A DNA stretch of 55,069 nt, the filler included, from Sluysia triapertura (Eukaryota): assembly GCA_046118255.1 (NCBI GenBank). It is 4 parts of 4 records of this genome, joined end to end, with 100 filler letters (N's around TTAATTAATTAA, not from the genome) between each part and the next. Parts side by side here need not be neighbours in the genome. Positions count along the whole stretch, not along the records: positions 1 to 15,855 come from JBJNIA010217029.1; 3 more parts are not named here. One strand, written 5' to 3'. Positions 1 to 15,855 of this stretch are shown here, one piece after another (position 1 is the first letter of the stretch; each line of letters starts with the position of its first letter). Position numbers and translations under genes: made by a program. The notes beneath the pieces are model-generated. The model saw nothing but the letters and a program-made list of their open reading frames with translations, ran no database searches and was not told the DNA's origin.

Positions 1-582
1 TTTCGTAGAAGTACACTTTCTTTTGACCAATAGCCAAGTCTTCTTTACGATTTAAATCTTGCGTTATTGGCGAACCCAGTAATCATAGTAAAATTATAAT
101 TGTTAAATTTAAAGAAAAATTCGAACAAAAATATTGCTACATGTATTTCGTGTCTGCTCTAATATGGCATGAATACTTGTCGGCAGTACTCTACAGGTAT
201 GAATATTACTCATTTGGGCTTTATTTCTAATAAAAAGAAACTGAGTCAACACGATTTACGGTTTTGAAATTTCTGTTTTCGGTTTTCTTTTATATTTCTC
301 TTTTTACACTTTCTCCTTCAGACAAATGAGAAATGAACGTCACTGTATTAAATTAAGCCGTTCACCTTATTTTCAATATTTTTGACACGGTTTCTACAAT
401 TTATCATTTACTCAAACATCTGAACCACTTATTCATAATCCTGGAACATGACGCACCACATGTCAGAGTATTCTGAATATTGTGAATTAATAAGCATGTC
501 AGATAAGAAAAAAATAATTTCAAATTTCATATTTTTATTATGCAGTGTTATAAGTAATGTACATTTGTTAAACTTTTTACAG

Positions 583-981
583 GAAAAAACCGACAAAGCG
601 AATGAATTAATTGTAGTAGTTAGTGCAGAAACTGAAAAAGTACGCGCTGAAAAAGAATATGCTAATGGTGAAGAAGTTAAAGTCGCTGCTATTAAAAAAG
701 AAGTTGAAAAAAAGCAACGTGAATGTGAACGTGATTTAACTCGAGCTGAACCAGCTTTAGTAGCAGCTCAAGAGGCATTAAATACATTAAATAAAGGTAA
801 CTTGACGGAATTGAAGTCCTTGGGCTCACCACCAGCGGATGTGGTCATGGTAGCACAAGCTGTCTTAGTATTGATGGCAAAAGGTGATCGGTTACCGAGA
901 GATAGGAGCTGGAAAAGTATTAAAGCGGGCATTATGTCCAAAGTAGATCAATTTTTGAGTAATTTAATAAATTACGATAAA
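583..981 (+). CDS. Axonemal dynein heavy chain, outer-arm beta type (DNAH9/11/17 family), internal exon: stalk coil CC1 and microtubule-binding domain
   Basis: AG at 581-582 and donor GTTAGT at 982. Encodes EKTDKANELIV...AEPALVAAQEALNTLNKGNLTELKSLGSPPADV...PRDRSWKSIK...LINYDK, closely matching the DNAH9/17 stalk and MTBD. Upstream exons lie outside the window. Confidence 0.95.
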
Positions 982-1499
982 GTTAGTATTTTATTATACC
1001 AAATTAAATAAAAATATTAACAAAGTTACCAATAATAACTTGGAGTCGGTTAATTTACTGAATAACATTAAATTAATATCAACAATAATTTATTTGTTTA
1101 AATCAATGATATAAATCAATGATATATATACTTTGAAGCATAATGTGACACATTCAAGAAATAAAAGAACTCAGTATCTTGATGAAAGTGATTAAACAAT
1201 TATCATATAAATATCACTTCTATTATTAGTAGCAATATAACCAATAAATAAATGTAGAACAAAAAAATACAATAATCTACACAAAGATACATCATTGACT
1301 GGTTGCATAATAAACAGGTTGGTGTGTATTACATGCACAATGTATTATTGAATGACCTTTTCATTGACATTACTTACGTGTGATTCATGTTTTTAAATTT
1401 AAAAACATAATAGTGCAACCATTTTTATTTCTCTTTAATAAGTTATTAATAAACTATATATACTATTTTTAAATAATAAATAATACGTATGAATTAAAG

Positions 1500-1833
1500 G
1501 AAAATATTCCACCAAACAATAAAGCCGAAGCTAAAAAATATGTACAAGATCGGAATTTTGATCCGGAAGTAATTAAAAGTAAATCTGTGGCAGCTGCTGG
1601 TATATGTGCCTGGGTTATTAATATTCTGAAATTCCATGATGTTTATTGTGAAGTAAAACCCAAACGAGATGCTTTAGATGCAGCCAATGAAGAATTGAGA
1701 CTGGCAGCTGAGAAATTGGAAGTAATTCACAAAAAATTGAGAAATTTGGAAGCAAGTCTTAATGAATTAACAGACAAATTCAATGCAGCAACAGAAGAAA
1801 AGCTACGTTGCCAAGAAGAAGCTGATTTTACTG
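1500..1833 (+). CDS. Dynein heavy chain exon (end of MTBD, CC2)
   Basis: AAG acceptor ending at 1499; GT at 1834 (phase 1). ENIPPNNK...[37 protein letters not shown] continues in frame from the previous exon. Confidence 0.93.
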
Positions 1834-2862
1834 GTTACATTTTTATAATTACTATATTTGTTTTTATTAATTTCAAAAGAAATAGTGACCATAACAATTA
1901 AGCAAATCACCATTCACTCGTATAGTCTCGTTAAAATAATAGCATTGATATGTGAGGCAGTCATGACAACCCTTTAAAATCATTTTAAAAATTATTTTCC
2001 AAAAAGAAAATTAGCTTCTAAAAATAGAATAGAAGCTTCTAGTATGTTCTAGAAAATTTCATCGGTGACAAGTACATAACTAGCATGAGCTTTATGAAAA
2101 TCGGCATTTTGATTTTTGCACTATTATAAAATTTTTCATTTTTACAAAACGCCGTGTTGAAAATTTCATGGAATTTTTTAGTTAACCCTTCACAGCTTCT
2201 AGTGGACTCATAATTTGGCATCAGATACAGAGCGACAACAACTCAAGATTATTCTGGGATTCCTGTTTTCCATGTTTTGGTAAATTTCAACTTAGGAAAA
2301 TGGACTCAAAATTTCTTTTACTTTATTTATTAGTCCCCGATATATTGAGGAATAAACTACAATTAACACATTATATTTATAAAATTAGACACTCTTGGAG
2401 CTTTAATTTTAAAGTATCATCTTTTTATATTTTACCTTTAACTCTTATTATTATCACATTTAATTATTCGTTTTTTGTGCAATAAAGTTTTTCATTTAAT
2501 AGGATAAAAGTTTATCTGGAAATTGCAGATTAAATTAACAAGTTTTTTGAAACAGTTAATTACGTAGTTAATTAAGCATTCATATTTATATAGAGTAAAA
2601 CGACCTCTTCACGACATAAGACGTTTACTGTAACCGGATCCTGCTCAAAAAATATTTTGCCACAGGTTAAGTATTAGAAAAACCACAGCACATGCTTTTA
2701 GATTTACCTATCTAGATGTATTTTCGGAGTAAAAATAGAAGTATTTTGTCAATAAGTAATGATGAACTTACTTCTTTGAACATCAGCAGTATTCAAAAGG
2801 TTAAAGATATTTCTAATTTTTATCTGCATATTTTAAAACCCTGTTTAACATTATAATTACAG

Positions 2863-3080
2863 CTAAAACATTGGACTTAGCAAATCGTTTGGTAAATGGA
2901 TTTGCATCAGAAAATATTCGTTGGGCAAATGAAGTTGATAATTTGAAGGAATTAGAGCAGACTATACCTGGAGATGTTCTTATTACAACTACTTTTATAT
3001 CGTATTTTGGATATTTCACAAAACCGTATCGTATTCAATTGATCGAACAAAAAATGTGGCCATTTTTAAAAAACCAACAA
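2863..3080 (+). CDS. Dynein heavy chain exon (end of CC2)
   Basis: CAG acceptor; phase-1 junction G|CT gives Ala. KTLDLANRLVNGFASENIRWA...PGDVLITTTFISYFGYFTKPYR; donor GTTATT at 3081. Confidence 0.93.
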
Positions 3081-4230
3081 GTTATTTTTAGTATAATTAA
3101 TAATTATGCAAAAGTAAAATCATTCATCTTAGACAGTATCAAAAACTTATTTTAAGTTTTAAATTAGATGTTTTTTAATTTTTTCTTCCAGACTGATTAC
3201 TATGAAATTGTTGTCTTTCTTAGGTGTCTGAGGATATCTGATGAAGACATGTTATGTACCAACTTTTTTCTTTTTTAACTATATTTTATCTCTCTTTTGC
3301 GATGTGGGGACTAATTTATTAATTTGTTATTAAATGTTTAATTTGTTTTTTTCAATTACTTTATTTTTGAATTTTTTCTTTTTGTTAATCCAAAAAGAAA
3401 TTAAGTCACTAAATTCCTTAAAAGAAAGTTATTTTTTTAAAAAGAAATCTTATTTTCAAAAAATGAAAATTCCTTACTAAAAATAGAAAAGAAGTTTCTA
3501 TGATTGGATGTGAATAATTTTATGTTTTACAAATTTTCAATTGCTCTATTTTGAAATTTGGAGTTTCTATTTTTTTGTGCTCAATTAAATCGGAATTTTA
3601 ACAATCAATCCATGCAAGAGTATATCTTTTTATTGAAAAGGTATTTTCATTTTAAGAATCAAATTTCAATTTTATTATTTATTGTAAGAAGCCCGATATG
3701 CCAGGATTTTAATCATAAAATGGTTGTTTGATTTTTTTAATTTTTCAATAATTTTAGTTATCGTATATAAGTAATATTTTAATGTACTCATTATTAGTTG
3801 AATTTTTGTTACATAAGATAAAATTATATAAAATTGTATATGACCCTCTTAGCAGTTACATAGCAGTTAGAGACATATTAGACAATTAAATATATTATTA
3901 TTATTAACCTTAAGTGACAGAAACATCACCTATACATTGCAAGACTTTTACTATAATCGAACATGTCAATTTTTTATTTTGCCGTAGGTTTAGATTTAAG
4001 AAAATCACAGTAATACATATATTTAACACAGTAGATAGTTATAGAGTAGATAATTATACAGTAGATAGTAAATACATATATTTAACTTAGTAGATGGGAT
4101 TCCTATCGTTTTGGCCTTGATTTATATCAACTTCTGCGATTGAACCGATTCTTAATAAGTAGAAAAATTGAAAAAATAGAATAGAATTCTTCCAAAAAAA
4201 ATTTTTAACTTGATAATTATATAATTTAAG

Positions 4231-4536
4231 AATAAAATTCCAATCCGTGATGGTATCGATCCATTAGAGATGTTAATTGACGATGCCATCATTGCAGGAT
4301 GGAGTAACGAAAATTTACCATCTGACAGAATGTCAGTTGAAAACGCAACTATTCTAACACATTGTGAAAGATGGCCATTAATGGTTGATCCACAACTACA
4401 AGCTATTAAATGGATTAAGACGAAATACGGTAACAATCTGGTAATAATGAGGCTCTCAGATAAGACTTATTTGGAAAATTTGGAAAAATCACTAACCAAT
4501 GGTGCTACGGTACTACTTGAAAATATAGGAGAAGAG
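4231..4536 (+). CDS. Dynein heavy chain exon (start of AAA5)
   Basis: AAG acceptor. DPLEMLIDDAIIAGWSNENLPSDRMSVENATILTHCERWPLMVDPQLQAIKWIK...VLLENIGEE; donor GTTATA at 4537. Confidence 0.95.
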
Positions 4537-5754
4537 GTTATATTTTTCAATTGAATTTATTTTTAGTAAACTATAACCTTATTTTAAAACCCTTTCAATC
4601 TAGGTTTATAAATTTCGAACAGAAAAGATAATCAAGTTCGTCTTTATTGTGTGCCTATGCACTACTTGTTTATTTCAGTAGTTTCTTAGATAGTGCAAAT
4701 CAGACCCCTATACTACGTTTCAATTTAATTTGTCGGATTAAATTTGAATTACACTGTAATTGGCTGTGCGATAAATATATTTCCACTATTTAATAAATGA
4801 CCATGTTAATTAAAAAAAGATTTGCTACTGCCTCTTTCCAAATGAATAAATTTTTAACAATAAACATTACCAGTACATACATCTTGAGAGAAACTCGAAG
4901 GTTTCTGTTTTCAATATGTCAATTTAGATTCGTTCTAAAGTGAAATTATGTAAAAATATAATATAAAATTATTGTTATTGTTTTCTCTTTGTCTAAAACT
5001 TTAATGGCGATTTTATGGCACCCTTGAATTCCTGTTTTAGGTTAGCGAAATTTATGATTATATAACTTTTTGATCTATTTTGTGATCTTTGCAAGAAATT
5101 TCAGTTTGGCGAGGGCGTAGTGAAATTTTCTTTACTAAAATTCTTAAACTTTATTAAACTTTCTAATTTTATTAATCTTCTAAAAATTTTTGTTTTATTT
5201 TTTAGTATAGTTTGACAAAAAATTAAGTTAAAACAATAAACAAAAATCCCTAACTAATTTAACATTACAAATACTAAACAAGTTGAATCTCTTATATTAA
5301 ACGAATTAAAAAACATAAAAATAACAAAAAATAGAATACTTAAGTTATAAACATATGAATATATAATATATACTGCTTTACTTTCATTCGTATCTGTGAA
5401 CTGCGATTTGTACTGAACAATTGATGAATGCTTTCATTTGCATTAAAGCACGTTTCGTGTGGCGTAATGATGAATCTTTGGCATTGATGATTGTTGAAAT
5501 ATAGTCATGTCTTATTCATTAAATTGAATTTTAGTTCGAAAATATTATATTTTTGTTAATTAATCTAATTTATTTGTATTTAATAGCATAAGAAAATTTT
5601 GAATTATAAAAATGTTACCACATTTAATTAAATTAATCTGAACTTTATTAATTACTGAATGAATGCAAAAATGAGAACATAATTGATTTGATATTTAGAT
5701 TTTGCGAGGTTTAGTCATTTTCTGGGTATGCTCACCTTATCGAAAATTGAAGTT

Positions 5755-6219
5755 CTAAAAAATAATAAATAATATAAACATATAATCTATCTGATTTTTA
5801 TAAGAACAAGAAAAACTAAAATTTAATATTATTTTAAAGTTCTGTTTGTTGCTCCAGTACAATGGCGATGACGTAACATTTAATAATAAGTTACCGATCC
5901 TACGATGATGATCATTTAGATACGAAGTTAAACTAAACAGGACTCTAATTTCGAAAGTATTGTGACCATAGATACATTTTCTGCCAGATCTGGAACACTC
6001 TCCATTCTGCGTTCTTCCATATAAGCATAAACCATATTTAAAATATTTGGATTGATGAGCATCATGTTGTAAATTCTTAGACGAAGATATATTGTTACTA
6101 TAGTAACATTCTAAGTTGTCAGTCTTTGTTTTTACTTTTGTCATGTCTTTTAGTAATGGCATGATTTTGTTTGTAATGACATACGAGTCAACATGTATAC
6201 TTTCATCTATTTTAATCAC
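5755..6219 (-). CDS. ORF with one intact Unkempt-type CCCH zinc finger, nested antisense in dynein intron 4537-10783 (gene or pseudogene)
   Basis: 5944-6045 encodes YFKYGLCLYGRTQNGECSRSGRKCIYGHNTFEIR. The C-x9-C-x6-C-x3-H spacing and flanks match Unkempt ZnF3 (YYKTGICIHETDSKGNCTKNGLHCAFAHGPHDLR). The ORF starts at GTG and the upstream frame is broken. Confidence 0.6.
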   Translation of the reverse strand: MIKIDESIHVDSYVITNKIMPLLKDMTKVKTKTDNLECYYSNNISSSKNLQHDAHQSKYFKYGLCLYGRTQNGECSRSGRKCIYGHNTFEIRVLFSLTSYLNDHHRRIGNLLLNVTSSPLYWSNKQNFKIILNFSFSCSYKNQIDYMFILFIIF

Positions 6220-7646
6220 GATATAACTTGAAGCATTAAGATGAATTTTCTTATATCATCTTGTTTTGCAATTTGTTTGCCTATTAATTTCAACATACAA
6301 TTTGAAGGCAAAGAGCGAATTTCGATTCTATAATTGGTTCATAAATGAATTCTAATTGATCGAATCGTACGATTAACACTAATTTTAAAGAAATATCATC
6401 CAATAAATACCATAGTTTGCTTAAATAATTACTTTATACTAAAATAGATTTAAATTTGATATAAGTTTTTAAAACTTAATTCGGATTTGATAAAATAAAA
6501 TATAACTTAACTTGTTTTTTTTTCACCGCAAAACTTCTAATTTATTTTACCACATAGTTAAATATTATAGTCTGAATAAATATCACATCTAATTATTGTT
6601 ATGACTTAGTTTAGTAATTAGTCTATATACTGATACTGATTTGGTTACTAAAATAAACAGTAATTTTTCTGATGATTGGACAACATTAAATGGAACAAAT
6701 GAGCACAATGTAGGAAGACCTTGCTGATTGGGTATTCAATCAAAACATAATACATGACTGAAATTTATTGAATGCCCAATCACAAGAGTGATACAAATGT
6801 GCTACACAATGTACACATGTCACCATAAAGCTTGTACTGACTGAATGATAATTAAAAATGGTGACAGGTAAATGTATAATTTGGCTCAATCAATAAATAA
6901 TCACCATGACATATGGTTAATTTTGTTAATGTTTATGATAATAATAAAAATAGTAACACTAAACAATAATAATAAAAATGGCTAAAATGATAATGATAGT
7001 AATAATAATTAAATAAATACATAAATCCTTAGAAGAATAATAAAACATGATCTTTCTCTTTTATTATTCTTAAATAAAATGAAATATGAATTTAAATTGC
7101 TTTAAGTGGAATTGGAATGTCAGTTAATGGTTTAAGTGAAAGTGTGGTTTTGAATGCTTTAAATGAATTTTTAAATGAGCATTGATGGTTTTGAATGTCA
7201 TAATGGTTTGTATGTTGTAAGTTTGTGAATTGAGATGTTTCAAATAAGATTGTGGCATGGATGTTAATAGTTTGCGGATTTAAAATGTTTTGAAATATTA
7301 AGAATGATTTTCGTAAATAATTTTGATGAATTTTTTAAATGTAAGTTATTAATTCTGAAAGTGATTGTGATTTTAATGTTATTAAGTTATAAAATATGAA
7401 TATTTTGAAAAGGTTATAATAAGGTTTTGATGGAAAGAATGGTTAAATGTTATAAAATATGAAATATATTGAATTAATTTTAAAATGTTTTAATTTGATT
7501 TTTAAGTGCATGATTGATGATTTTCGATGTCGAATATGATTTTGCTGCTGTAAATTTTTATGTTTAAAATGTTTGATGGTATTAAGAGTTGTGAAATATT
7601 GTAAAGAGTGATTCTGTAATGATAAAATAAAATTTGTTGAAGTAAT

Positions 7647-7662
7647 AGGTTGGCCACCACAA
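7647..7662 (-). repeat. Conserved 16-nt terminus (TTGTGGTGGCCAACCT) of a dispersed strand-skewed repeat, LTR-like
   Basis: Identical 16-mer at 7647, 9859 and 14946; one-mismatch copy in the opposite orientation at 54874. Confidence 0.7.
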
Positions 7663-8107
7663 TGATATGAAGTTATCATGAAAGTTATTGTGATAGAAGT
7701 TATGATAACAATAAACAGAATTACTGATAACTATGTACAATGACTGTGTTTATTTTTTAAATGACTCGAGTAATTTGTTTGAAGATTTATATGCTAATAT
7801 TATATTGATTATTGATAAAGAAAATTGTGATCAACATTAAATTTAATTATTTGAAAGAAAATTGTTTTTAAAAGCTTTTTGTAGATGTAATTAACAATTA
7901 ATTAATAAAAATAAAATCTAGGACATTTATTTGATATAATAACAATAATTTAATGAAATTGTTTACAAAATTGTTAAAATTAAAATATGTTAATTGATGA
8001 TTCTTTTCCGAACCTGTCGCGAACAATATGTTAAACAGAATTCTTACTAAATAAAAATAACAAAAGCCATTATAATCTGTTACAGTTTTTAAAATATAAA
8101 TATTTAC

Positions 8108-8953
8108 CTTACAACAAAATTTATCATCTTGCATTTGGTCTCGAATCGTTGGAGCTATCGTTTGCATAGATAGATAGTGGTAATGATGCCTTAAATCATT
8201 GATTCCGTGTGCGAATGCGAAATAATACATAAATAATACATAAATAATACACTGTCCGGATTCAGATGTTCCGTAAGGGCATAAACCGGTTTTGTAATAG
8301 AGAAGATAATAAAGTTGTTCTGTGTCTCCTACATTTCGATGAACATATGGACATTGATCTCCATTTGGATAGATTTCTGTCTTAACATTATATAAATTAC
8401 AATAAACATCAAGATTGTATTTAATGTGCCATTAGGTTTTCGTATTGACGCACGACGATGTTGCTTTGGGAAATGCCAATTAAAACATGTGTATGGTATT
8501 TGTAATTGACATTTGTGATCAAGAAATAATGACGGAGGATGTTTCCTCAATATCGATTAAATAATCATAATACAGCTTGTCAATTAGAGGTTCAGAAATA
8601 CAAAATACTTAATAAGCTATATCTCCTTCGTAAAATGTTTCAGTAAATAATAATTGGATCTCTTTTTTTAACATCTTTAGAAAATAGAAATAATAGTTTT
8701 CCTTGCAATATTACTTTTTGATTTGTTAACGTTTTAAACTCACTTTCCTTTTCATTAGAATTTCTTCTAAACTTATGGATACAAGTACATGACTTAAATA
8801 ATCAAAATAATTATACATCATTGGGAATGAATTTTCTCTAGATGTAGCGATGATATACTTGTTCTTGGCAACATAAAGTAAAAGTGATTTCTTGCTGCTT
8901 GTAAATGATTGAAAAAATGTACTTTCTAATAAATTCTCATCATATGAGTTCAT
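8108..8953 (-). pseudogene. Unkempt (UNK/UNKL)-derived pseudogene, ZnF1-3 region with an unrelated N-terminal ORF segment
   Basis: 8581->8189 translates, across two frameshifts (~8551 and ~8417), as DKLYYDYLID/LRKHPPSLFLDHKCQLQIPYTCFNWHFPKQHRRASIRKPNGTLN/NLDVYCNLYNVKTEIYPNGDQCPYVHRNVGDTEQLYYLLYYKTGLCPYGTSESGQC...AFAHGINDLR. This is collinear with the Unkempt N-terminus. Several zinc-ligand Cys are lost. Possible donor GTAAAT at 8107. Confidence 0.85.
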
Positions 8954-9204
8954 TATTGATAGCTTTTGAATAACTAAGTAATTTATATAGGTATAAAGTA
9001 TAATTTTTTGAACTCAAAAAAATAATTGTGTAAGAGTAATTGAGAAACGCCAATTGTAAATTAATTGGCTACAAATAAAAAGTAATTAATTTTGTTTATT
9101 GTATTAAAATTTTACAATTAAAAAGCTATTGACAGTACTATGAAATTTGGTTGATGATAAACTGTCAATATGACAGTCACTAACTACTATAATTGACATA
9201 GATA

Positions 9205-9340
9205 NNNNNNNNNNNNNNNNNNNNNNNNNNNNNNNNNNNNNNNNNNNNNNNNNNNNNNNNNNNNNNNNNNNNNNNNNNNNNNNNNNNNNNNNNNNNNNNN
9301 NNNNNNNNNNNNNNNNNNNNNNNNNNNNNNNNNNNNNNNN
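9205..9340. other. Assembly gap (136 N)
   Basis: Run of N with no spacer motif. The dynein exons on either side join in frame. Confidence 0.95.
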
Positions 9341-10783
9341 ATAATAATATAAAAGAGAATAAATATTAATAATAGATAATATAAAATTAATAATAAAAAA
9401 CGCATCGAATTTTCTACACAAATCTCCTCTTAATTCTTTTAATTCTCAAAACTTCATAAAATATGCTCTTTATTTAATATTAAGATTCTTTTAATTTAGT
9501 TATCTTTTCTTTAAAAAATAAAATTGGAATTCTTTCTCTTTAAATCTTTTAATTCTTTTACTATTCTTTGAATATAAAAATGAAAATATAAAGAGAATTT
9601 ATGAATAAATATCAGAAACCTTATTGAAATCAGCAATAAAATGTTTAATAGAGGGATGGTAGTACAATGTTCTAAAATAAAAGAAGAATAAAAAGAAATT
9701 AGTGAAGCTGGAGATGTTAAAAGAAATTCCATTTACAACACTATTATATTTAAATTTGAATTACAATTTTACTGATATTGTAATAAAATAAAAAGCCGAA
9801 ATATTGCAAAATGTGATTTTTTAGTATGATGTAATGAGTTGAAATTTTGAGTGATATAAGGTTGGCCACCACAATTGGTTTAGTGTTTTGTTTACGTAAG
9901 AAATATTTGTATGTGATGAAGTGTGATTTTAATTTTGATGTGAAAATGTGTGGCTCCCTACATCTAGTAACAAATATACGCAAATATTTCTTGTCTTAAT
10001 TCTACTGTTCGTAAGCATCCTAACATCTTTTACTAATACTTAAAATAATGTGACGAATATTTTAGTATTAAATTTAAGTTATTGGTAGTTTAAAAAAATA
10101 AATAATTTTAACTCACATTTTTGAAAAAAACGGCAAAAATTCATTTTTTTTATTTAAGAAAACACTTTTTAGAATTTTGCTTTGACAAAAAATACAAAAC
10201 AAGCAAAATTTTAATTATAATTTTGTAAAAGCCGAATATTGCAATCTTGTACGTTCATCGACTTTTATTATCTTTCTTTTCGAATTGCTGTTTCGAAAAA
10301 AATATATTTTCATCAGTAAAAATATTCATTTTAATTTTTTAACAGTAATAATAGTAGCAGTATTATTTATTTTAAAAAATGATAAATATCAATAAAACGA
10401 CCCTACTCGAATGAACTCGAACTTAATTTTGAAATTACAAATAGTATCATAAAGTTTGGATAGCAAAATGAATCAATGGAGCTATTCTAGATTATCGTAT
10501 TTTCTTTCCTTTTATTGTCTTCTTATTCATTTGCTTTTTTGATATTTAATTAAGAAGTCCAATCATTTATTCTCTTCTTTCTGTTGTATCTATTTACTAT
10601 TTAATTTTTCTTTTATATTTATATTAGGCCAATAATTTTGCTAATTAGTTATATTGTTATCACGTTTTAGTTGTTATTTTTTAATTTTTATACGAAAATG
10701 TTAATAATGTTTGGTAAAATGTAGTTTTTACAGAATTATTTTACAAAATAAACTTTGATACGGTTTTTGTAATATTAATTTAG

Positions 10784-11221
10784 ATTGACGCTGTATTAGG
10801 TCCAGTAATTGGTCGTCAAACAATTAAAAAAGGGAAAGCTATTAAATTAGGAGACAAAGAAATTCCATACAATCCCAGTTTTAGGCTTATTCTTCAAACA
10901 AAATTAGCAAATCCGCATTACCAGCCCGAAATGCAAGCTCAGACAACACTAATCAACTTTACAGTAACCAGGGATGGTTTAGAAGATCAATTGTTAGGTG
11001 TGGTAGTCAGCAAAGAAAGACCGGACTTAGAACAGATTAAATCAGATTTGACTGTGCAGCAGAATTCTTTCAAGATCACCTTAAAAGACTTGGAAGATTC
11101 ATTGCTGGCTAAATTGTCATCTTCTAGTGGTAATTTCTTAGGTGACCATAGTCTGGTAGAAAACTTGGAGACCAATAAAAAGACTGCTAATGATATTGCT
11201 GTGAAAGTAAAAGAAGCAAAA
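10784..11221 (+). CDS. Dynein heavy chain exon (AAA5 and strut)
   Basis: TAG acceptor. [71 protein letters not shown]...[12 protein letters not shown]; donor GTAATT at 11222. No further dynein exon found before the scaffold ends. Confidence 0.95.
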
Positions 11222-12236
11222 GTAATTATTATAATTATTAATTTTATAATAATTATATTATTTTTTATTATGAAAATGAAAATTTTCTTGAACAATCAAA
11301 ACGGCAAAACTTCTTTTTTTAGAAACAAACATCAATTTCTTATTTTTCCACTCCTAACTATGAAAAATTTTAACTCTGATTCAGAATGAAGTTGATCCTT
11401 CAGCTGTAGCGAAATCAGAAGGAATGGAATCTGACATTCTCGATGAATAAAATATAATTGATACTTGGTTTATATCTTTATTGAAGGAAAATAACTTTTG
11501 AAAACAACTTCTAGCATTTACTCACTATCAAAAATTTGAGGTAATGCGTATTTTCCCAGAGAAACACCTATCAGGTCTACACTGTCAAAGTTTTGTTTTC
11601 TTAAAATGCAACAACACACCTTCAACTATTATTAATTTTAAAGGTCATGTGCAGCGATTATTAATATATTTTTGATTAGTAATGATTTAGGATTTTTTTC
11701 ATAGTTCGTTGAAGATAAATATTTCTCCAATTAATAATATAGTGTAAAAAATTTTCATACCTTTTTAATTGTTTGAGTAGAATATTTTCTTTCGTTAATG
11801 TTTCTCTTATTGACAATTTTGAGTATTAATCTTTTTAATACTTCTGTTACTTATGGGCATATTTTTGTTACTTTTACTTGTTTGCCTTTTGTATTTTTAT
11901 GTGCTGTTTCATAATTATCCCATAGGAAAAAATTATCTGTTGCAGTAAAATTGTTTTATTCTTAGATATTATCGTAATGGCGGTGAACTCTATTATTTTG
12001 GTTGGTGAGGATAATTATTTATTATTAAAAATTGATTAATTTTATAAAGAAAAGTTTTATAGTAATTAGATGAGCTTGAAATCATTTCTCTTGACGTTAT
12101 CTGAGACATTTTAACAAATCTTAAATACATTATAAAATAATTAAAAGTCAAAAAACCAAAAGGTATACATTTATTTATTGACTTTAAAATAAAAATTTTA
12201 ATTTTTTTGAAGATATTCTATACATAATTTTGAACC

Positions 12237-13518
12237 TCATCTTGACTTTAGTTTATAATCAAATTTTACCAATGAATTTGTCCTAGCAATATAAGAATAT
12301 ATACTTGAAATTTGTTGTCTCGGAAGCCACTTGCTTGTAATCTCGGATATTTTCAGCGTACTATAATAGGATGGCAGAGATGTTTTTTTGATAGGTTGGG
12401 TATGGTCTGTAGTTACTTCCACAACCAATCTTGACAAGAATCGATGGCTGTTTTTGCTGTAATCTACTGCATGTTGTTGATCAAAGTTTGGTACCATCAC
12501 AATATTCCGATCATAATTACGTTTTAAAAATTTCATTTCATTAAAATAACAATAATCTAATCTTTTACCAAAAGAATAATAATAAAGGTCTATTTATTTA
12601 CAAAAATCATAATAATTTATTTCTTTAGAAAAATCATAATAACCTATTCTTTTACAAAGATAATAATAATAATAATAATCTATTTCTTTACAAAAATCAT
12701 AATAACCTAATCTTTTACAAAGAGAATAATAATAGTAACAATCTATTTTACAAAAATCATAATTTATTTCCTTAGAAAAATCATAATAATCGGTTATTAC
12801 GTTGAAGGATGAATCCGCATACATAAGCATAAACAAATTTGGAGAGACATTTGAATGTTTAAAATGACTTAATCGAAATATGGAATTTATAGACATACCA
12901 GGTTTAACTAAATCGAATAGTAGAATTTTGATATCAAATGCAGTTACGCATAGAAATATTATGCGAGCTGTCAAATTGTCTAGTAATTTTGATAAAACTT
13001 TAAAAACTCCTTTAGAATCTTTAATTATATGTACATCAATACTTTGTTTAGCAAGTACCTAGTCTTACATGAACTAGGTAACACATAGAACATCTTTTAG
13101 TAATATACAGCTTTTGTTGTTCTAAAGGATTAGACAAAAGAATTCTACTTTCTTGAAAATGAATTTAATAGTCTTTTTGTTTTAACGAATCCTTTGTTTC
13201 AAAATAATCATATCTACTTGGGATATACTCATTTAATTCAAAATATACTTTCAGACACAACTCTAGCGATTTCAACGAAATCAAACAAAAGTCATTTTTA
13301 CTAAATAAGACATTAATTTTCTCATCACTTGTAGAATTACAATCAAATAACTGATATGATAAATATATCTTTTTGGTTTCTGGTTTCATTATATATACAC
13401 AAATACCTGATTTAACTCTTCTTTTACTTTCATACTTAAAAATTACCTTTTCCCATTTCTTTTTATCAAAATATTCAACATCATTTATTTGCATTATTAC
13501 TAAAATAAAATTGAACAA
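12237..13518 (-). pseudogene. Decayed unknown coding locus containing Tyr/Cys-rich tandem repeats
   Basis: Three collinear ORFs (13165-13518, 12594-12974, 12237-12536) linked by in-frame TAA codons and frameshifts. The ~27-bp degenerate repeat at ~12545-12795 encodes YYDFCKEID/YYYLCKRIG-like units. Confidence 0.45.
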
Positions 13519-13629
13519 TTCTTTTCACTGTAATAAACAAAATTTTTCTTACAAAGTTATTTGGTTGCTATTTTTAACGAGTCTATTTTTAACTATACTA
13601 TTTTTTGTCTCTTAGTATGTGGTTGGTCA

Positions 13630-13679
13630 TCCAATCAGGACCTCTAGTATACAAGTAAAAGAAACTCAACCTGATTGGA
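13630..13679. promoter_or_regulatory. Inverted pair of CCAAT boxes
   Basis: TCCAATCAGG (13630-13639) and its perfect reverse complement CCTGATTGGA (13670-13679), about 110-160 bp upstream of the minus-strand ORF starting at 13518. Confidence 0.35.
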
Positions 13680-15575
13680 CGATAGGTAGAAAATACGAAC
13701 TAAGTTACAAAATAATAATCACTATAATGAATATTGTGACGAGCAGTGTCAACACTGGTGATGGCTCCAACTAATTAAAACATTTTATGAAAATTGAATT
13801 AATATTAATTCAATAATTTGGCAATAATAATAACAACATTGCTATTATTATTATTTACACAAAAGTCAAAAGAAAAGAAAGTCAAAATCTGTTTTCTTGG
13901 TTAATATGCACGATCTTACTATCTTTCGGTCCTTCATCTCAACATATAAAAGATAAAAAATGAAATAAAAATTGCTAACATGTGATGAAATAACGATAAT
14001 AACAGGGCGCACTATGCTCGAGTTATTGTTGTTAATTTATTGTATAAAATTGAATTGTTTAAAATTGTGCACGATCTTTCTTAATTCATAAAAGTTTCTA
14101 ACATGTTGAAATAAATTAAACTTGTATTTGGGACTAAGTTGTTTTTTGAAAGAATTAATAAGTATAATTAACCTTTGAAGATATAATAATTTATTTGAGT
14201 TGTGAAATAAAATAGAGAATGTTAGAATAAGTTCTTAGATGTTGATTTAAGTTCATAATTGAAAAAAAGATTTAAGTATTGGAAGATCGTGGATAAAAAG
14301 TTTAATGAGAAGATTGTAATTTAATAAATCTAAAAAGGCAACTACAATACAACAACTACAAAACATTGTATATTTAAAATATTATTGTACAATGTTTTGT
14401 GTGATTTGTTTGTTTGATGTTTTTGATGGTGTTGTATTATGCTGTTGATGATTATGTATATACGAATAGTGAATTTAAGATGTTGTAATTGATTCGAAGA
14501 TGTGAAGTAGGTATTTTACAGTAGGTATTTCAAGTAGATTTGCTGGTGTTATCTAATGGTATTAAATTTAATTGTGGTTTATACATTATAAGTTTGTGAC
14601 TATGATTTAGTTTAGGCAAATAAACTATTAAATGAATATTATTAAATATTAAATATTAAAGTATTGCTAGTAAATATTAAAGTGTAGTGTAAAATGAAGG
14701 ATTCGAAAGTATAGAGTGGATTATCTCGAATGTGTTTGTTGTTGGATTATTGTGAATGTCGAGTACATGTTTTAGGTGGATTAGTTAGTGTAAATAGGTA
14801 AAGCTGGGTGTAATTGTGATTTGTATGTTGTGGAATTTTGGGTATGGATTGATTTTAGAAGGTATGTAATAGATGAATGTATGAGTGTTAAAGTGTGATT
14901 AATAGAAAAAATATTGGTTTTTTTATAAAATTCTAATGGTTGTAAAGGTTGGCCACCACAACATGAATTAATATAAATGAATAATATATTGTTATTATAT
15001 TTTATATTTCTCTTTTTATTCCATGTGCATTGTTGAATACCAATCAAATGATAGTGTGTCTCAACGGTATCTCAATGAATAATATGTTATCTTTATTCAT
15101 CTCTTTATATGGTCATTTTTGAATACATTTTTCAACGTGACCTCAGTTTGGTAGACTATACAGTTTTATGGTTAGTTACCGTTACTTCTACTGTTTGTTT
15201 ACTTTGTTGCTTGGACACTCATTTTTTAAATCACGATTTTCTCCTTTGTTTGTTATGTCATGTTCATATTTGATCACACTGTGCATTCTGCACTTTTTAT
15301 TCGATGTTTGATGATTATTCCACGAGTGCAGCTTGATTTAATTTAATTTATCAATTTTATAATTCATGTAATAATATTAATTTTATATCTATAATTTTGT
15401 TTTACATATTAATGGTTTAAATATTAATTTTTGAATTTTATGATAAATATTTCTTACAATGATCCACGATTTCTTTATTTTATATTTAATATGAAATAAA
15501 TAATAATTTCACAAACTTGTTATTGATATCAATTCTAAATTAAATATTAATCAATTTCAACTCAATTATTCTTAC

Positions 15576-15855
15576 TCGTCACATTCTTTCTACATCCCGG
15601 TAGACCGTACTCTACTGAAACATCCGTCGTTATCATTTTATCCATTCCATGATTTAAAATAATTCCACATTTTATTCGATCTTTATCAATTGTAATATTT
15701 CCACATTGAATACGTTTCGAAGTGAATATTAATTTAATATTATCTGGATAAATTAGATCTAAATATTTTACTACTACTGTAAATGATGAATTGTCTGTGT
15801 CTAAAACATAACTTTCGATACTTAAATCAGTATATGAAACAAGATATCTCCGATT
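15576..15855 (-). CDS. Open exon truncated by the scaffold end, IPT/TIG-like domain (plexin/Met-type)
   Basis: 97 stop-free codons from 15855: ...SFTVVVKYLDLIYPDNIKLIFTSKRIQCGNITIDKDRIKCGII...VSVEYGLPGC. Candidate donor GTAAGA at 15575. Missing from the ORF track because it has no early start codon. Confidence 0.5.

What the first reader, a model, noticed from the sequence alone, without database searches (positions are those of the whole stretch)
5755..8953. Tandem pair of Unkempt-derived CCCH loci hidden antisense in a dynein intron
Seen: the 6.2-kb dynein intron 4537-10783 holds two minus-strand loci with Unkempt-type fingers. One (8581-8189) covers ZnF1-3 collinearly but is frameshifted and has lost Cys ligands. 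The other (6045-5944) is far more diverged yet keeps an intact C-x9-C-x6-C-x3-H finger in a 154-codon ORF. Both appear to follow non-Unkempt N-terminal sequence, and neither shows ZnF4-6 or the RING. Established: Unkempt is a low-copy translational regulator with six CCCH fingers that binds RNA. Inference: a lineage-specific, fast-turnover family of truncated or chimeric Unkempt-like RNA-binding proteins. This is the best candidate here for an undescribed system.
Basis: partly seen in the sequence, partly recalled or inferred. Interest (0 to 1): 0.75.

Follow-up and report, generated by a model that had tools for sequence, protein, structure and literature searches.

The report
Unkempt-finger fragments carried by a transposon
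The two "Unkempt-like" loci are real, but they are decayed copies of a mobile element present thousands of times in this genome, which picked up pieces of host genes (the Unkempt zinc fingers among them) and spread them; they are not a hidden pair of host genes.

Summary
Minus-strand Unkempt-type CCCH fingers lie at 8556-8190 (ZnF1-3, broken) and 6027-5962 (one intact C-x9-C-x6-C-x3-H finger), inside a true dynein heavy-chain intron (4537-10783).

Each locus is the cargo of a separate ~2.1-2.2 kb repeat element: A = 9873-7778 and B = 7661-5492. Both begin 5'-TGTGGTGGCCAACC, a motif with 2,309 exact 15-mer hits genome-wide against 0 for the control. Both are flanked by 5-bp target-site duplications, as LTR-type (integrase-made) insertions are.

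The ORFs are chimeras of captured host-gene pieces.
- A fuses the N-terminus of ANKRD27/VARP to Unkempt ZnF1-3. The Unkempt part lacks an intron of the genome's own unk gene, so it was copied from spliced mRNA.
- B is a long-branch derivative that keeps only a ZnF3-like finger. A sister subfamily of B carries a PCMT fragment.
- ZnF4 is found only at the two canonical unk loci.

Both window copies are dead. Across copies, however, the ORF shows purifying selection: in B, dN/dS is 0.38 in frame against 1.0 out of frame.

No paired LTRs or internal gag-pol region were found, so the "solo LTR" reading is inferred. No RNA data exist. This is a new variant of a known kind: a gene-fragment-capturing transposon.

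The parts
7778..9873 (-). Element A, a full-length copy of the repeat (2,096 bp, including the assembly gap 9187-9400). It starts 5'-TGTGGTGGCCAACC at 9873 and ends ...AAATCTTCAAA at 7778. The flanking 5-mers are imperfect: CCAAT (9878-9874) and CAAAT (7777-7773).
   Evidence: Sharp homology boundaries against many copies. Coordinates. Sister A copies carry a perfect or near-perfect 5-bp duplication: L003 TATTG; L040 GAATA/GAACA; L057 AATAT.
8729..8953 (-). Element A: start of the chimeric ORF (ATG at 8953), an ANKRD27/VARP-like N-terminal domain remnant, cut short by a 16-nt deletion after 8756.
   Evidence: 140 genomic matches that are collinear with the finger part. A profile of natural copies hits the N-termini (residues ~4-130) of insect ANKRD27/VPS9-ankyrin proteins, best E=5e-10. 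hhalign against Microplitis demolitor ANKRD27 residues 4-156 gives probability 98%, E=1e-13.
8440..8556 (-). Element A: Unkempt ZnF1 remnant. Its first Cys was lost with the 122-nt deletion after 8533. It is out of frame with ZnF2-3 because of a 1-nt deletion after 8425.
   Evidence: PF18384, 38.3 bits. Indel list. The same region is intact in L012 (62.1 bits) and L017.
8190..8431 (-). Element A: Unkempt ZnF2-ZnF3 remnant. A 9-nt duplication at 8233-8225 replaces the third Cys of ZnF3.
   Evidence: PF25427, 34.6 bits. PDB 5ELH, E=8e-20. Alignment.
8047..8107 (-). Element A: intron-like GT...AG segment just after the coding part, followed by AATAAA at 7931-7926.
   Evidence: The GTAAAT donor and TTTAG acceptor are conserved across diverged copies. 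No RNA evidence, so this is inference.
5492..7661 (-). Element B, a full-length copy (2,170 bp). It starts 5'-TGTGGTGGCCAACC at 7661 and ends ...TTTCAACA at 5492. It has a perfect 5-bp target-site duplication, ATCAT, at 7666-7662 and 5491-5487.
   Evidence: Collinear homology from 7662 to 5490 in many copies. Termini and duplications. Six of 8 full-length B copies have perfect 5-bp duplications, each a different sequence.
6900..7661 (-). Element B: G-poor 5' region (4.8% G on the element strand). It is the most conserved and most abundant part of the repeat.
   Evidence: Composition. Up to 90% identity to other copies, with 4,081 first-look candidates. Depth spike in the DNA run.
5755..6255 (-). 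Element B: remnant of the chimeric ORF (166-codon stop-to-stop piece; 154 codons from the GTG at 6219). It holds the ZnF3-like finger at 6027-5962 and the post-finger segment. Upstream coding pieces at 6433-6293 and 6338-6219 are in other frames.
   Evidence: The full-length natural ORF in L046 is 258 codons.
5755..5832 (-). Element B: intron-like segment. The donor GT is mutated to AT at 5832 in this copy, and the acceptor TAG at 5757-5755 serves as the ORF's stop. A short second exon follows, ending at TAA 5713-5711. AATAAA signals lie at 5649-5644 and 5574-5569.
   Evidence: Alignment of 11 copies. Coordinates. Inference only: there is no RNA data.
4537..10783 (+). Host intron of a dynein heavy-chain gene. 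Both elements lie in it, antisense to the host gene.
   Evidence: Pfam AAA_9 is split between the exons ending at 4536 and starting at 10784. Further dynein exons are seen.

Best explanation
The interval holds the coding remnants of two independent, same-orientation insertions of a high-copy repeat superfamily. The elements are 2.1-2.2 kb long and have LTR-type ends (5'-TGTGG...CA-3', with 5-bp target-site duplications).

The superfamily carries a chimeric ORF assembled from captured host-gene fragments. In the A type, the first ~150 residues of ANKRD27/VARP are fused to Unkempt ZnF1-3 plus ~35 post-finger residues. That Unkempt part was copied from a spliced unk mRNA. The B type is a strongly diverged derivative that keeps only the ZnF3-like finger and the post-finger segment behind a different N-terminus, which is PCMT-derived in a sister subfamily.

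Shown:
- the repeat nature, the termini, the duplications and the copy number;
- the host-gene origins of the ORF parts;
- the absence of the unk intron;
- the decay of both window copies;
- dN/dS below 1 among copies.

Inferred:
- the units are solo LTRs (or LTR-like units) inserted by a retroviral-type integrase (my estimate ~55%);
- the host fragments were picked up by template switching during reverse transcription;
- the RNA-binding chimeric protein was of use to the propagating element lineages, for example by binding the element's own RNA.

The confidence given is for the shown core, that these are dead copies of a transposable element carrying captured host-gene fragments. It is not for the LTR sub-claim.
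For: Repeat nature:
- 152+, 150+ and 140 genomic matches to the three coding pieces, with 583, 3,763 and 228 first-look candidates.
- DNA homology has sharp ends.

Termini and duplications:
- The terminal 15-mer TGTGGTGGCCAACCT occurs 2,309 times; the control occurs 0 times.
- 5-bp duplications, each a different sequence, flank 6 of 8 full-length B copies and A copies L003, L057 and (4 of 5 bases) L040.
- TGTNR termini and 4-6-bp duplications are the LTR signature (PMC2836005, PMC12440569).

Origin from the genome's own unk:
- TE copy L056 is 83% nt / 80% aa identical to the canonical unk exon on C224636.
- The homology starts exactly at that exon's 5' splice boundary, while the TE copy runs on upstream into ZnF1-2 coding sequence. 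The intron is therefore absent.

Origin of the N-terminus: ANKRD27/VARP.

PCMT fragment: L045, 27.4 bits against a 20.3 cut-off.

ZnF4: found only at two canonical loci.

Selection: B ORF dN/dS 0.38 in frame against 1.00 and 0.95 in the two shifted frames; A 0.50-0.56 against 0.7-1.2.

Tree: B is one clade (100/100) on a long branch, and canonical unk sits among the A types.
Against: - No intact LTR retrotransposon was found. About 38 independent 5' flanks share nothing. Only 5-9 of more than 2,300 termini follow a purine run, and those runs all differ.
- A-type copies end ...CCAAA rather than ...CA.
- The element keeps an intron-like segment, which an RNA-copied element might be expected to lose.
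- The 5' non-coding region is more conserved than the ORF (up to 90% against ~70-76%).
- No RNA data are available, so transcription, splicing and translation are untested.
- The dN/dS sample was limited to stop-free segments, which biases the ratio somewhat downward.
Confidence: 0.85

Rival explanations
1. The units are non-autonomous cut-and-paste DNA transposons, moved by an integrase-related transposase (Ginger2/TDD-like). They are not solo LTRs.
For: TGTNR ends are shared by Ginger elements, and TDD-4/5 make 5-bp duplications. Every sampled copy is a single unit with its own duplication, and no PPT/PBS-adjacent copies were found. The element retains an intron-like segment.
Against: Terminal inverted repeats are only ~7 bp (TGTGGTG/CACCACA), against 40-270 bp in Ginger. 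Metazoan Ginger2 elements make 4-bp duplications. The Unkempt cargo lacks a host intron, which points to an RNA intermediate. Old LTR families are commonly almost all solo.
Confidence: 0.25
2. One reading: a tandem pair from a host gene family of truncated or chimeric Unkempt-like RNA-binding proteins, evolving by ordinary gene duplication.
For: The ORFs are chimeric, lineage-specific and show dN/dS below 1. No homolog of the A2-type ORF (natural copy L039) was found in a 5.8-billion-protein collection. About a fifth of the long B matches are stop-free.
Against: Homology extends ~1.2 kb upstream and ~250 bp downstream of the ORF to fixed termini with 5-bp duplications. Flanks beyond the termini are unrelated. 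There are thousands of copies, mostly with stops, frameshifts or lost zinc ligands (7 of 17 B fingers intact). The two window loci are separate insertions, and both are broken.
Confidence: 0.05
3. LINE-mediated processed pseudogenes (retrocopies) of unk.
For: The Unkempt part lacks a host intron.
Against: There is no poly(A) tail. The duplication length is constant at 5 bp. The unit has constant non-unk 5' and 3' termini and ~1.2 kb of non-unk upstream sequence. It is fused to an ANKRD27 fragment. The copy number is in the thousands.
Confidence: 0.02

Closest known systems
[quoted passage not shown]
   Same: LTR-type ends and target-site duplications. Cargo built from pieces of more than one host gene, forming a chimeric ORF. 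The cargo lacks a host intron. Some captured ORFs are under purifying selection (PMC3726574; PMC10886601).
   Different: Only single units are seen here, with no paired LTRs and no internal region. The ORF sits inside the LTR-like unit itself. The host appears to be an insect-like animal rather than a plant. The cargo (ANKRD27 N-terminus + Unkempt ZnF1-3) did not turn up in my two paper searches.
Pack-MULEs and Helitrons (gene-fragment-capturing DNA transposons)
   Same: They work alike: amplification of chimeric ORFs stitched from fragments of unrelated host genes, mostly decaying, with some showing dN/dS below 1.
   Different: Pack-MULEs have long TIRs and 9-bp duplications. Helitrons have no duplication and 5'-TC...CTRR-3' ends. 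Both capture genomic DNA with its introns. None of these features fits here.
Canonical Unkempt (UNK), the six-CCCH-finger translational regulator; PDB 5ELH covers ZnF1-3
   Same: A-type copies carry ZnF1, ZnF2 and ZnF3 in order, with Unkempt-specific spacing (C-x9-C-x6-C-x3-H in ZnF3) and this genome's own post-finger sequence.
   Different: No ZnF4-6 and no RING. The N-terminus is foreign. The sequence is multicopy and TE-borne. Most copies have lost zinc ligands.
MMTV sag (an ORF encoded inside a retroviral LTR)
   Same: A protein-coding ORF located within an LTR-type unit. This comparison rests on my own knowledge, not a tool result.
   Different: sag is not a captured RNA-binding domain. 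MMTV is a complete retrovirus.

Membership tests
Unkempt (UNK/UNKL) protein family | ZnF1 of Unkempt type (Pfam PF18384) | tested here: met
   Locus 1: 38.3 bits against a cut-off of 25. Sister copies L012 62.1 bits and L017 48.5 bits. Locus 2 (B type): absent.
Unkempt (UNK/UNKL) protein family | ZnF2-3 of Unkempt type (Pfam PF25427; C-x9-C-x6-C-x3-H in ZnF3) | tested here: met
   Locus 1: 34.6 bits against a cut-off of 31.1; PDB 5ELH E=8e-20. Locus 2: 28.3 bits, below the cut-off. Its spacing is intact, 10 of 17 sister copies hit at E<=0.01, and the pairwise E to the genome's own unk is 2e-8. For locus 2 the homology is supported, but the Pfam threshold is not reached.
Unkempt (UNK/UNKL) protein family | Second finger cluster ZnF4-6 (PF23035, PF23261) | tested here: not met
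   PF23035 hits only C224636 and C191742 in the whole genome. No hit in any element ORF.
Unkempt (UNK/UNKL) protein family | C-terminal RING finger | tested here: not met
   No RING family in the Pfam scans of window pieces or of natural element ORFs. The ORFs end ~60-70 residues after ZnF3.
LTR of an LTR retrotransposon (solo LTR) | 5'-TG...CA-3' ends (TGTNR pattern) with short inverted termini | tested here: met
   5' TGTGGTGGCCAACC in A, B and a third element. B ends ...CACCACA/...CAACA. A ends ...CTCCAAA, so the 3' CA is not strict in A.
LTR of an LTR retrotransposon (solo LTR) | Target-site duplication of 4-6 bp, fixed length, variable sequence | tested here: met
   5 bp. B copies: window ATCAT, L073 ATGCT, L075 ATTCT, L076 GGTAG, L077 CCTGT, L080 ATTAG. 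A copies: L003 TATTG, L057 AATAT.
LTR of an LTR retrotransposon (solo LTR) | Existence of paired LTRs flanking PBS, gag-pol and PPT | tested here: not met
   No shared sequence among ~38 5' flanks and ~25 3' flanks. Only 5-9 purine-run-adjacent termini out of more than 2,300, all different.
Ginger/TDD cut-and-paste transposons | Terminal inverted repeats of ~40-270 bp and an integrase-like transposase partner | tested here: not met
   The inverted match is ~7 bp only. Criteria come from PMC2836005. The transposase partner was not searched for.
Helitron | No target-site duplication; 5'-TC...CTRR-3' ends | tested here: not met
   5-bp duplications and TG...CA ends.
LINE-mediated processed pseudogene | Poly(A) tail, variable-length duplication, and a unit equal to the mRNA of one gene | tested here: not met
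   No A-tail at the 3' ends. Fixed 5-bp duplications. The unit contains sequence from at least 2 genes plus ~1.2 kb of non-genic sequence.

The most novel reading that the evidence does not exclude
The ANKRD27-Unkempt chimera is a working, element-encoded RNA-binding protein. On this reading the LTR-like unit is a self-contained mini-gene whose product helps the non-autonomous element propagate, for example by binding its own transcript for packaging or reverse transcription in trans, as Gag or ORF1p do, or by acting as a dominant-negative decoy of the host translational regulator Unkempt. That would be a transposon that replaced a nucleic-acid chaperone with a stolen host CCCH module.
Probability: 0.2. 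Interest if true: 0.75.

Novelty: new variant of a known kind. Interest (0 to 1): 0.45.

Why it matters
TEs are well known to capture and shuffle host exons in plants. It is far less documented in animals, and my searches found no report of Unkempt fingers as TE cargo.

Here a host RNA-binding module (ZnF1-3 of a translational regulator) was fused to a fragment of an unrelated trafficking protein and amplified to thousands of copies. The signal of purifying selection cannot be a composition artefact, because the shifted-frame controls give ~1.0. If that signal reflects function, the family is a natural experiment in how a mobile element recruits an RNA-binding domain.

In practice, these copies will contaminate gene predictions in this genome, appearing as "Unkempt-like", "ANKRD27-like" or "PCMT-like" fragments, and should be masked. 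For the window itself the result is ordinary: two dead TE copies in an intron.

Tried and rejected
- tRNA and Rfam scans of the window: nothing. This tested the idea that the terminal TGGTGGCCAACC is tRNA-related, and it led nowhere.
- Inverted and direct repeat scan: no long TIRs or internal LTRs.
- Word-index protein search with a natural 276-aa A2-type ORF: no hit. That search cannot see the longer Unkempt or ANKRD27 proteins.
- AlphaFold2 of that ORF with a 19-row alignment: mean pLDDT 44.7, so no fold search was run.
- RNA evidence: the only run holding the sequence is a DNA run kept as contigs. Its unitigs match the window but say nothing about expression.
- Search for a polypurine tract next to the 5' terminus: chance level.
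I did not try to get the same letters by another tool.
- B N-terminus against ANKRD27: no relation by hhalign.
- A protease-like ORF next to one copy (L068) is in the wrong place and orientation to be this element's interior.
- Adjacency of A and B as one composite unit: rejected, because each has its own duplication and other copies occur alone.
Broken frames were searched piece by piece, and only natural copies were used.
Full report
WHAT IS IN THE WINDOW

The piece (1-15855; contig C217029 of a 619-Mb assembly in 263,945 contigs) is ~25% G+C. On the + strand it carries a dynein heavy-chain gene. The Pfam dynein-motor model AAA_9 is split exactly between an exon ending at 4536 (profile positions 2-81) and one starting at 10784 (profile positions 82-222), and further stalk and AAA exons lie upstream. 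The 6.2-kb intron 4537-10783 is therefore real.

THE OBSERVATION

On the minus strand, piece 8556-8332 hits Unkempt ZnF1 (PF18384, 38.3 bits against a cut-off of 25). Piece 8431-7901 hits the Unkempt CCCH model PF25427 (34.6 bits against 31.1). It aligns to residues 54-132 of the solved mouse Unkempt ZnF1-3 (PDB 5ELH) with E=8e-20.

The second locus is ORF 6219-5755, with C-x9-C-x6-C-x3-H at 6027-5962. Its evidence is as follows:
- PF25427 at 28.3 bits, just under the cut-off;
- PDB 5ELH at E=0.0037;
- this genome's own unk exon at E=2e-8;
- 10 of 17 sister copies reach E<=0.01 on PF25427;
- a profile of B copies aligns to a profile of A copies over the finger and post-finger segment at E=1.5e-9.

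PF23035 finds only two other contigs in the genome, which are the canonical unk gene(s).

BOTH LOCI ARE COPIES OF A DISPERSED REPEAT

Searching the whole genome with each coding piece gave 140-152 scored matches each, out of 583, 3,763 and 228 first-look candidates. The matches are scattered over different contigs at 30-80% amino-acid identity, and most contain stops.

At DNA level the homology runs far beyond the ORFs and stops sharply. For the first locus it runs from 9873 to 7778 (element A, which includes the N gap 9187-9400). For the second it runs from 7661 to 5492 (element B).

Both elements, and a third short one at 14960-13983 in the next intron, begin with the same 14 bases, TGTGGTGGCCAACC. 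The 15-mer TGTGGTGGCCAACCT occurs 2,309 times in the genome, against 0 for the reversed control. B copies end ...CACCACA or ...CAACA. A copies end ...CTCCAAA.

Directly outside the ends there are 5-bp direct repeats, of different sequence at each copy.
- B copies: ATCAT (window), ATGCT, ATTCT, GGTAG, CCTGT and ATTAG, in 6 of 8 full-length copies.
- A copies: TATTG and AATAT, plus near-matches for L040 and for the window copy (CCAAT/CAAAT).

Flanks beyond the repeats are unrelated. These are transposition products, not gene duplicates. The window's "tandem pair" is two separate insertions 111 bp apart.

WHAT KIND OF ELEMENT

Three features are the signature of LTRs of LTR retrotransposons, and of a few integrase-related DNA transposons (PMC2836005; PMC12440569): TGTNR...CA ends, only ~7 bp of terminal inverted match, and a constant 5-bp duplication.

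A further argument for an RNA step is the cargo itself. The canonical unk gene (contig C224636) has an intron immediately before the codons for C-Q-Y-V-H-R-N of ZnF2. The element copy closest to it (L056, 83% nt and 80% aa identity) matches from exactly that exon boundary onward, yet continues upstream, without interruption, into ZnF1-ZnF2 coding sequence. So the Unkempt part came from spliced mRNA.

Against the LTR reading, I found no paired units, no shared internal sequence next to ~38 5' ends and ~25 3' ends, and no polypurine tract beside the termini beyond chance.

I therefore call the units "LTR-like, most likely solo LTRs" at ~55%, with a non-autonomous integrase-mobilised DNA element as the main rival at ~25%.

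THE CARGO IS A CHIMERA OF HOST GENES

A profile of the A-type N-terminal ~140 residues, built from natural copies only, was searched against 1.84 billion representative proteins. It found 25 hits, best E=5e-10. All lie at the very N-terminus of the hit protein, or within its first ~60 residues. The long ones scanned with Pfam carry a VPS9 domain and ankyrin repeats, and two clusters are named by their sources: ANKRD27 of the wasp Microplitis and a VPS9-domain protein of the louse Polyplax. hhalign to Microplitis ANKRD27 residues 4-156 gives probability 98% and E=1e-13, starting at the shared M-x-x-Y-D-E-N/D-L start. These nearest relatives suggest the host is an insect, which is inference.

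After the ANKRD27 piece come ~30 linker residues and then Unkempt from just before ZnF1 to ~35 residues past ZnF3. That stretch includes a post-finger motif specific to this genome's unk (V-N-D-A-A-E-x-I-A-N-L...L-E-K-E) and ends close to the canonical exon's 3' end.

A 61-78-nt GT...AG segment, a very short second exon and AATAAA signals follow, all conserved between A and B. Whether that segment is spliced is untested.

The B type shares the termini, the ZnF3-like finger, the post-finger segment and the 3' part, but it has a different N-terminus. In a sister subfamily (L045) that N-terminus contains a PCMT (isoaspartyl methyltransferase) fragment at 27.4 bits against a cut-off of 20.3. It shows no relation to ANKRD27.

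In a tree of the finger and post-finger region, B is one clade (100/100) on a long branch, and canonical unk sits among the A types next to L056. This fits a capture of unk into an A-like element, with B as a later, remodelled offshoot.

STATE OF THE TWO WINDOW COPIES

Both are dead.

Copy A has six indels and a nonsense codon relative to its closest relatives:
- a 16-nt deletion after 8756;
- a 5-nt deletion after 8669;
- TAA at 8611-8609;
- a 122-nt deletion after 8533 that removes the start of ZnF1;
- a 1-nt deletion after 8425;
- a 9-nt duplication at 8233-8225 in ZnF3;
- a 24-nt deletion after 8188.

Copy B keeps all four zinc ligands, as do 7 of 17 B copies compared. Its N-terminal coding part is split over three frames (6433-6293, 6338-6219, 6255-5758). 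The donor of the intron-like segment is mutated (G to A at 5832). The last ~26 codons of the "154-codon ORF" are read-through that ends at the acceptor's TAG.

The only public run that holds this DNA is a DNA run. Its unitigs agree with the window, and its depth rises steeply over the repeat's 5' region.

SELECTION

Pairwise Nei-Gojobori estimates over 120 pairs of stop-free B segments give dN 0.22, dS 0.61 and a ratio of 0.38 (0.33 over the finger and post-finger part). The same alignment read in the two shifted frames gives 1.00 and 0.95-1.00. The low ratio is therefore not a composition artefact.

For A, the ANKRD27-like domain gives 0.56 and the finger part 0.50, against 0.7-1.2 in shifted frames. 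This is a weaker signal on noisier alignments.

Copies decay neutrally after insertion, so a pooled ratio this low implies real constraint on the ORF in the lineages that produced new copies. What the protein did for them is inference. By analogy with Unkempt ZnF1-3, which bind RNA, I favour binding of the element's own transcript. A decoy effect on host Unkempt targets is an alternative.

Caveats: choosing stop-free segments biases the ratio somewhat downward, and the non-coding 5' region is more conserved than the ORF.

VERDICT

It misses the main point, which is that these are cargo of a transposable element, and the two copies in this intron are ordinary dead insertions lying antisense to the host gene.

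As a family it is a new variant of a known kind, a gene-fragment-capturing LTR-type element, with cargo not previously described as far as my paper searches reach.

Noticed in passing
window 13983-14960 (minus strand): A third, short (978 bp) member of the same repeat superfamily, in the next dynein intron. It has the same 5' TGTGGTGGCCAACC, ends ...TCATCA, has a perfect 5-bp duplication CATGT (14965-14961 and 13982-13978), is G-poor (5.6% G), and carries no Unkempt-like ORF. All three insertions in the window lie antisense to the dynein gene.
   Followed up: partly
window 10108-10420: Another, unrelated high-copy repeat (77-84% identity to many contigs) inside the same intron.
   Followed up: no
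window 6900-7661 and 13983-14960; L-loci of B copies: The 5' ~750 bp of the elements is almost free of G on the element strand (about 5% G against 17-20% C). It is also the most conserved part (up to 90-92% identity) and the most abundant part: the Logan depth peak is at 7432-7558. The cause of the strand asymmetry is unexplained.
   Followed up: partly
L045:324-1199 (-) and L043:1183-2088 (-): A diverged B subfamily whose ORF starts with a fragment of protein-L-isoaspartate O-methyltransferase (Pfam PCMT positions 25-94, above the cut-off), fused upstream of the Unkempt-like finger. This is a third host gene sampled by the family. In these copies the sequence I first read as a TATA box in B is coding.
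   Followed up: partly
window 7662-7777; L057 (rc) ~2100-2145; L079 600-1300: Elements of this superfamily tend to sit head-to-tail within ~50-110 bp of one another, or are recombined with each other, more often than ~1% genome coverage would predict. This suggests a possible insertion preference near existing copies.
   Followed up: no
L091 (C224636) and L092 (C191742): There are two canonical Unkempt-type loci with ZnF4-5 exons, clearly diverged from one another in that exon, so likely unk and an unk-like paralog. The canonical exons are much richer in G+C than the surrounding DNA, and the intron after the ZnF3 exon in L091 is only ~50 nt.
   Followed up: partly
L068:209-715 (+): A 169-codon open frame with a retroviral-type aspartic-protease-like motif (I-L-G-M-D-V-I) lies beside a B-type fragment. 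It is probably an unrelated Gypsy-like remnant. It was not scanned against Pfam.
   Followed up: no
L075 ~1380-3125: One B copy carries an extra ~1.7 kb between its 5' region and the ORF, presumably a nested insertion. It was not examined.
   Followed up: no
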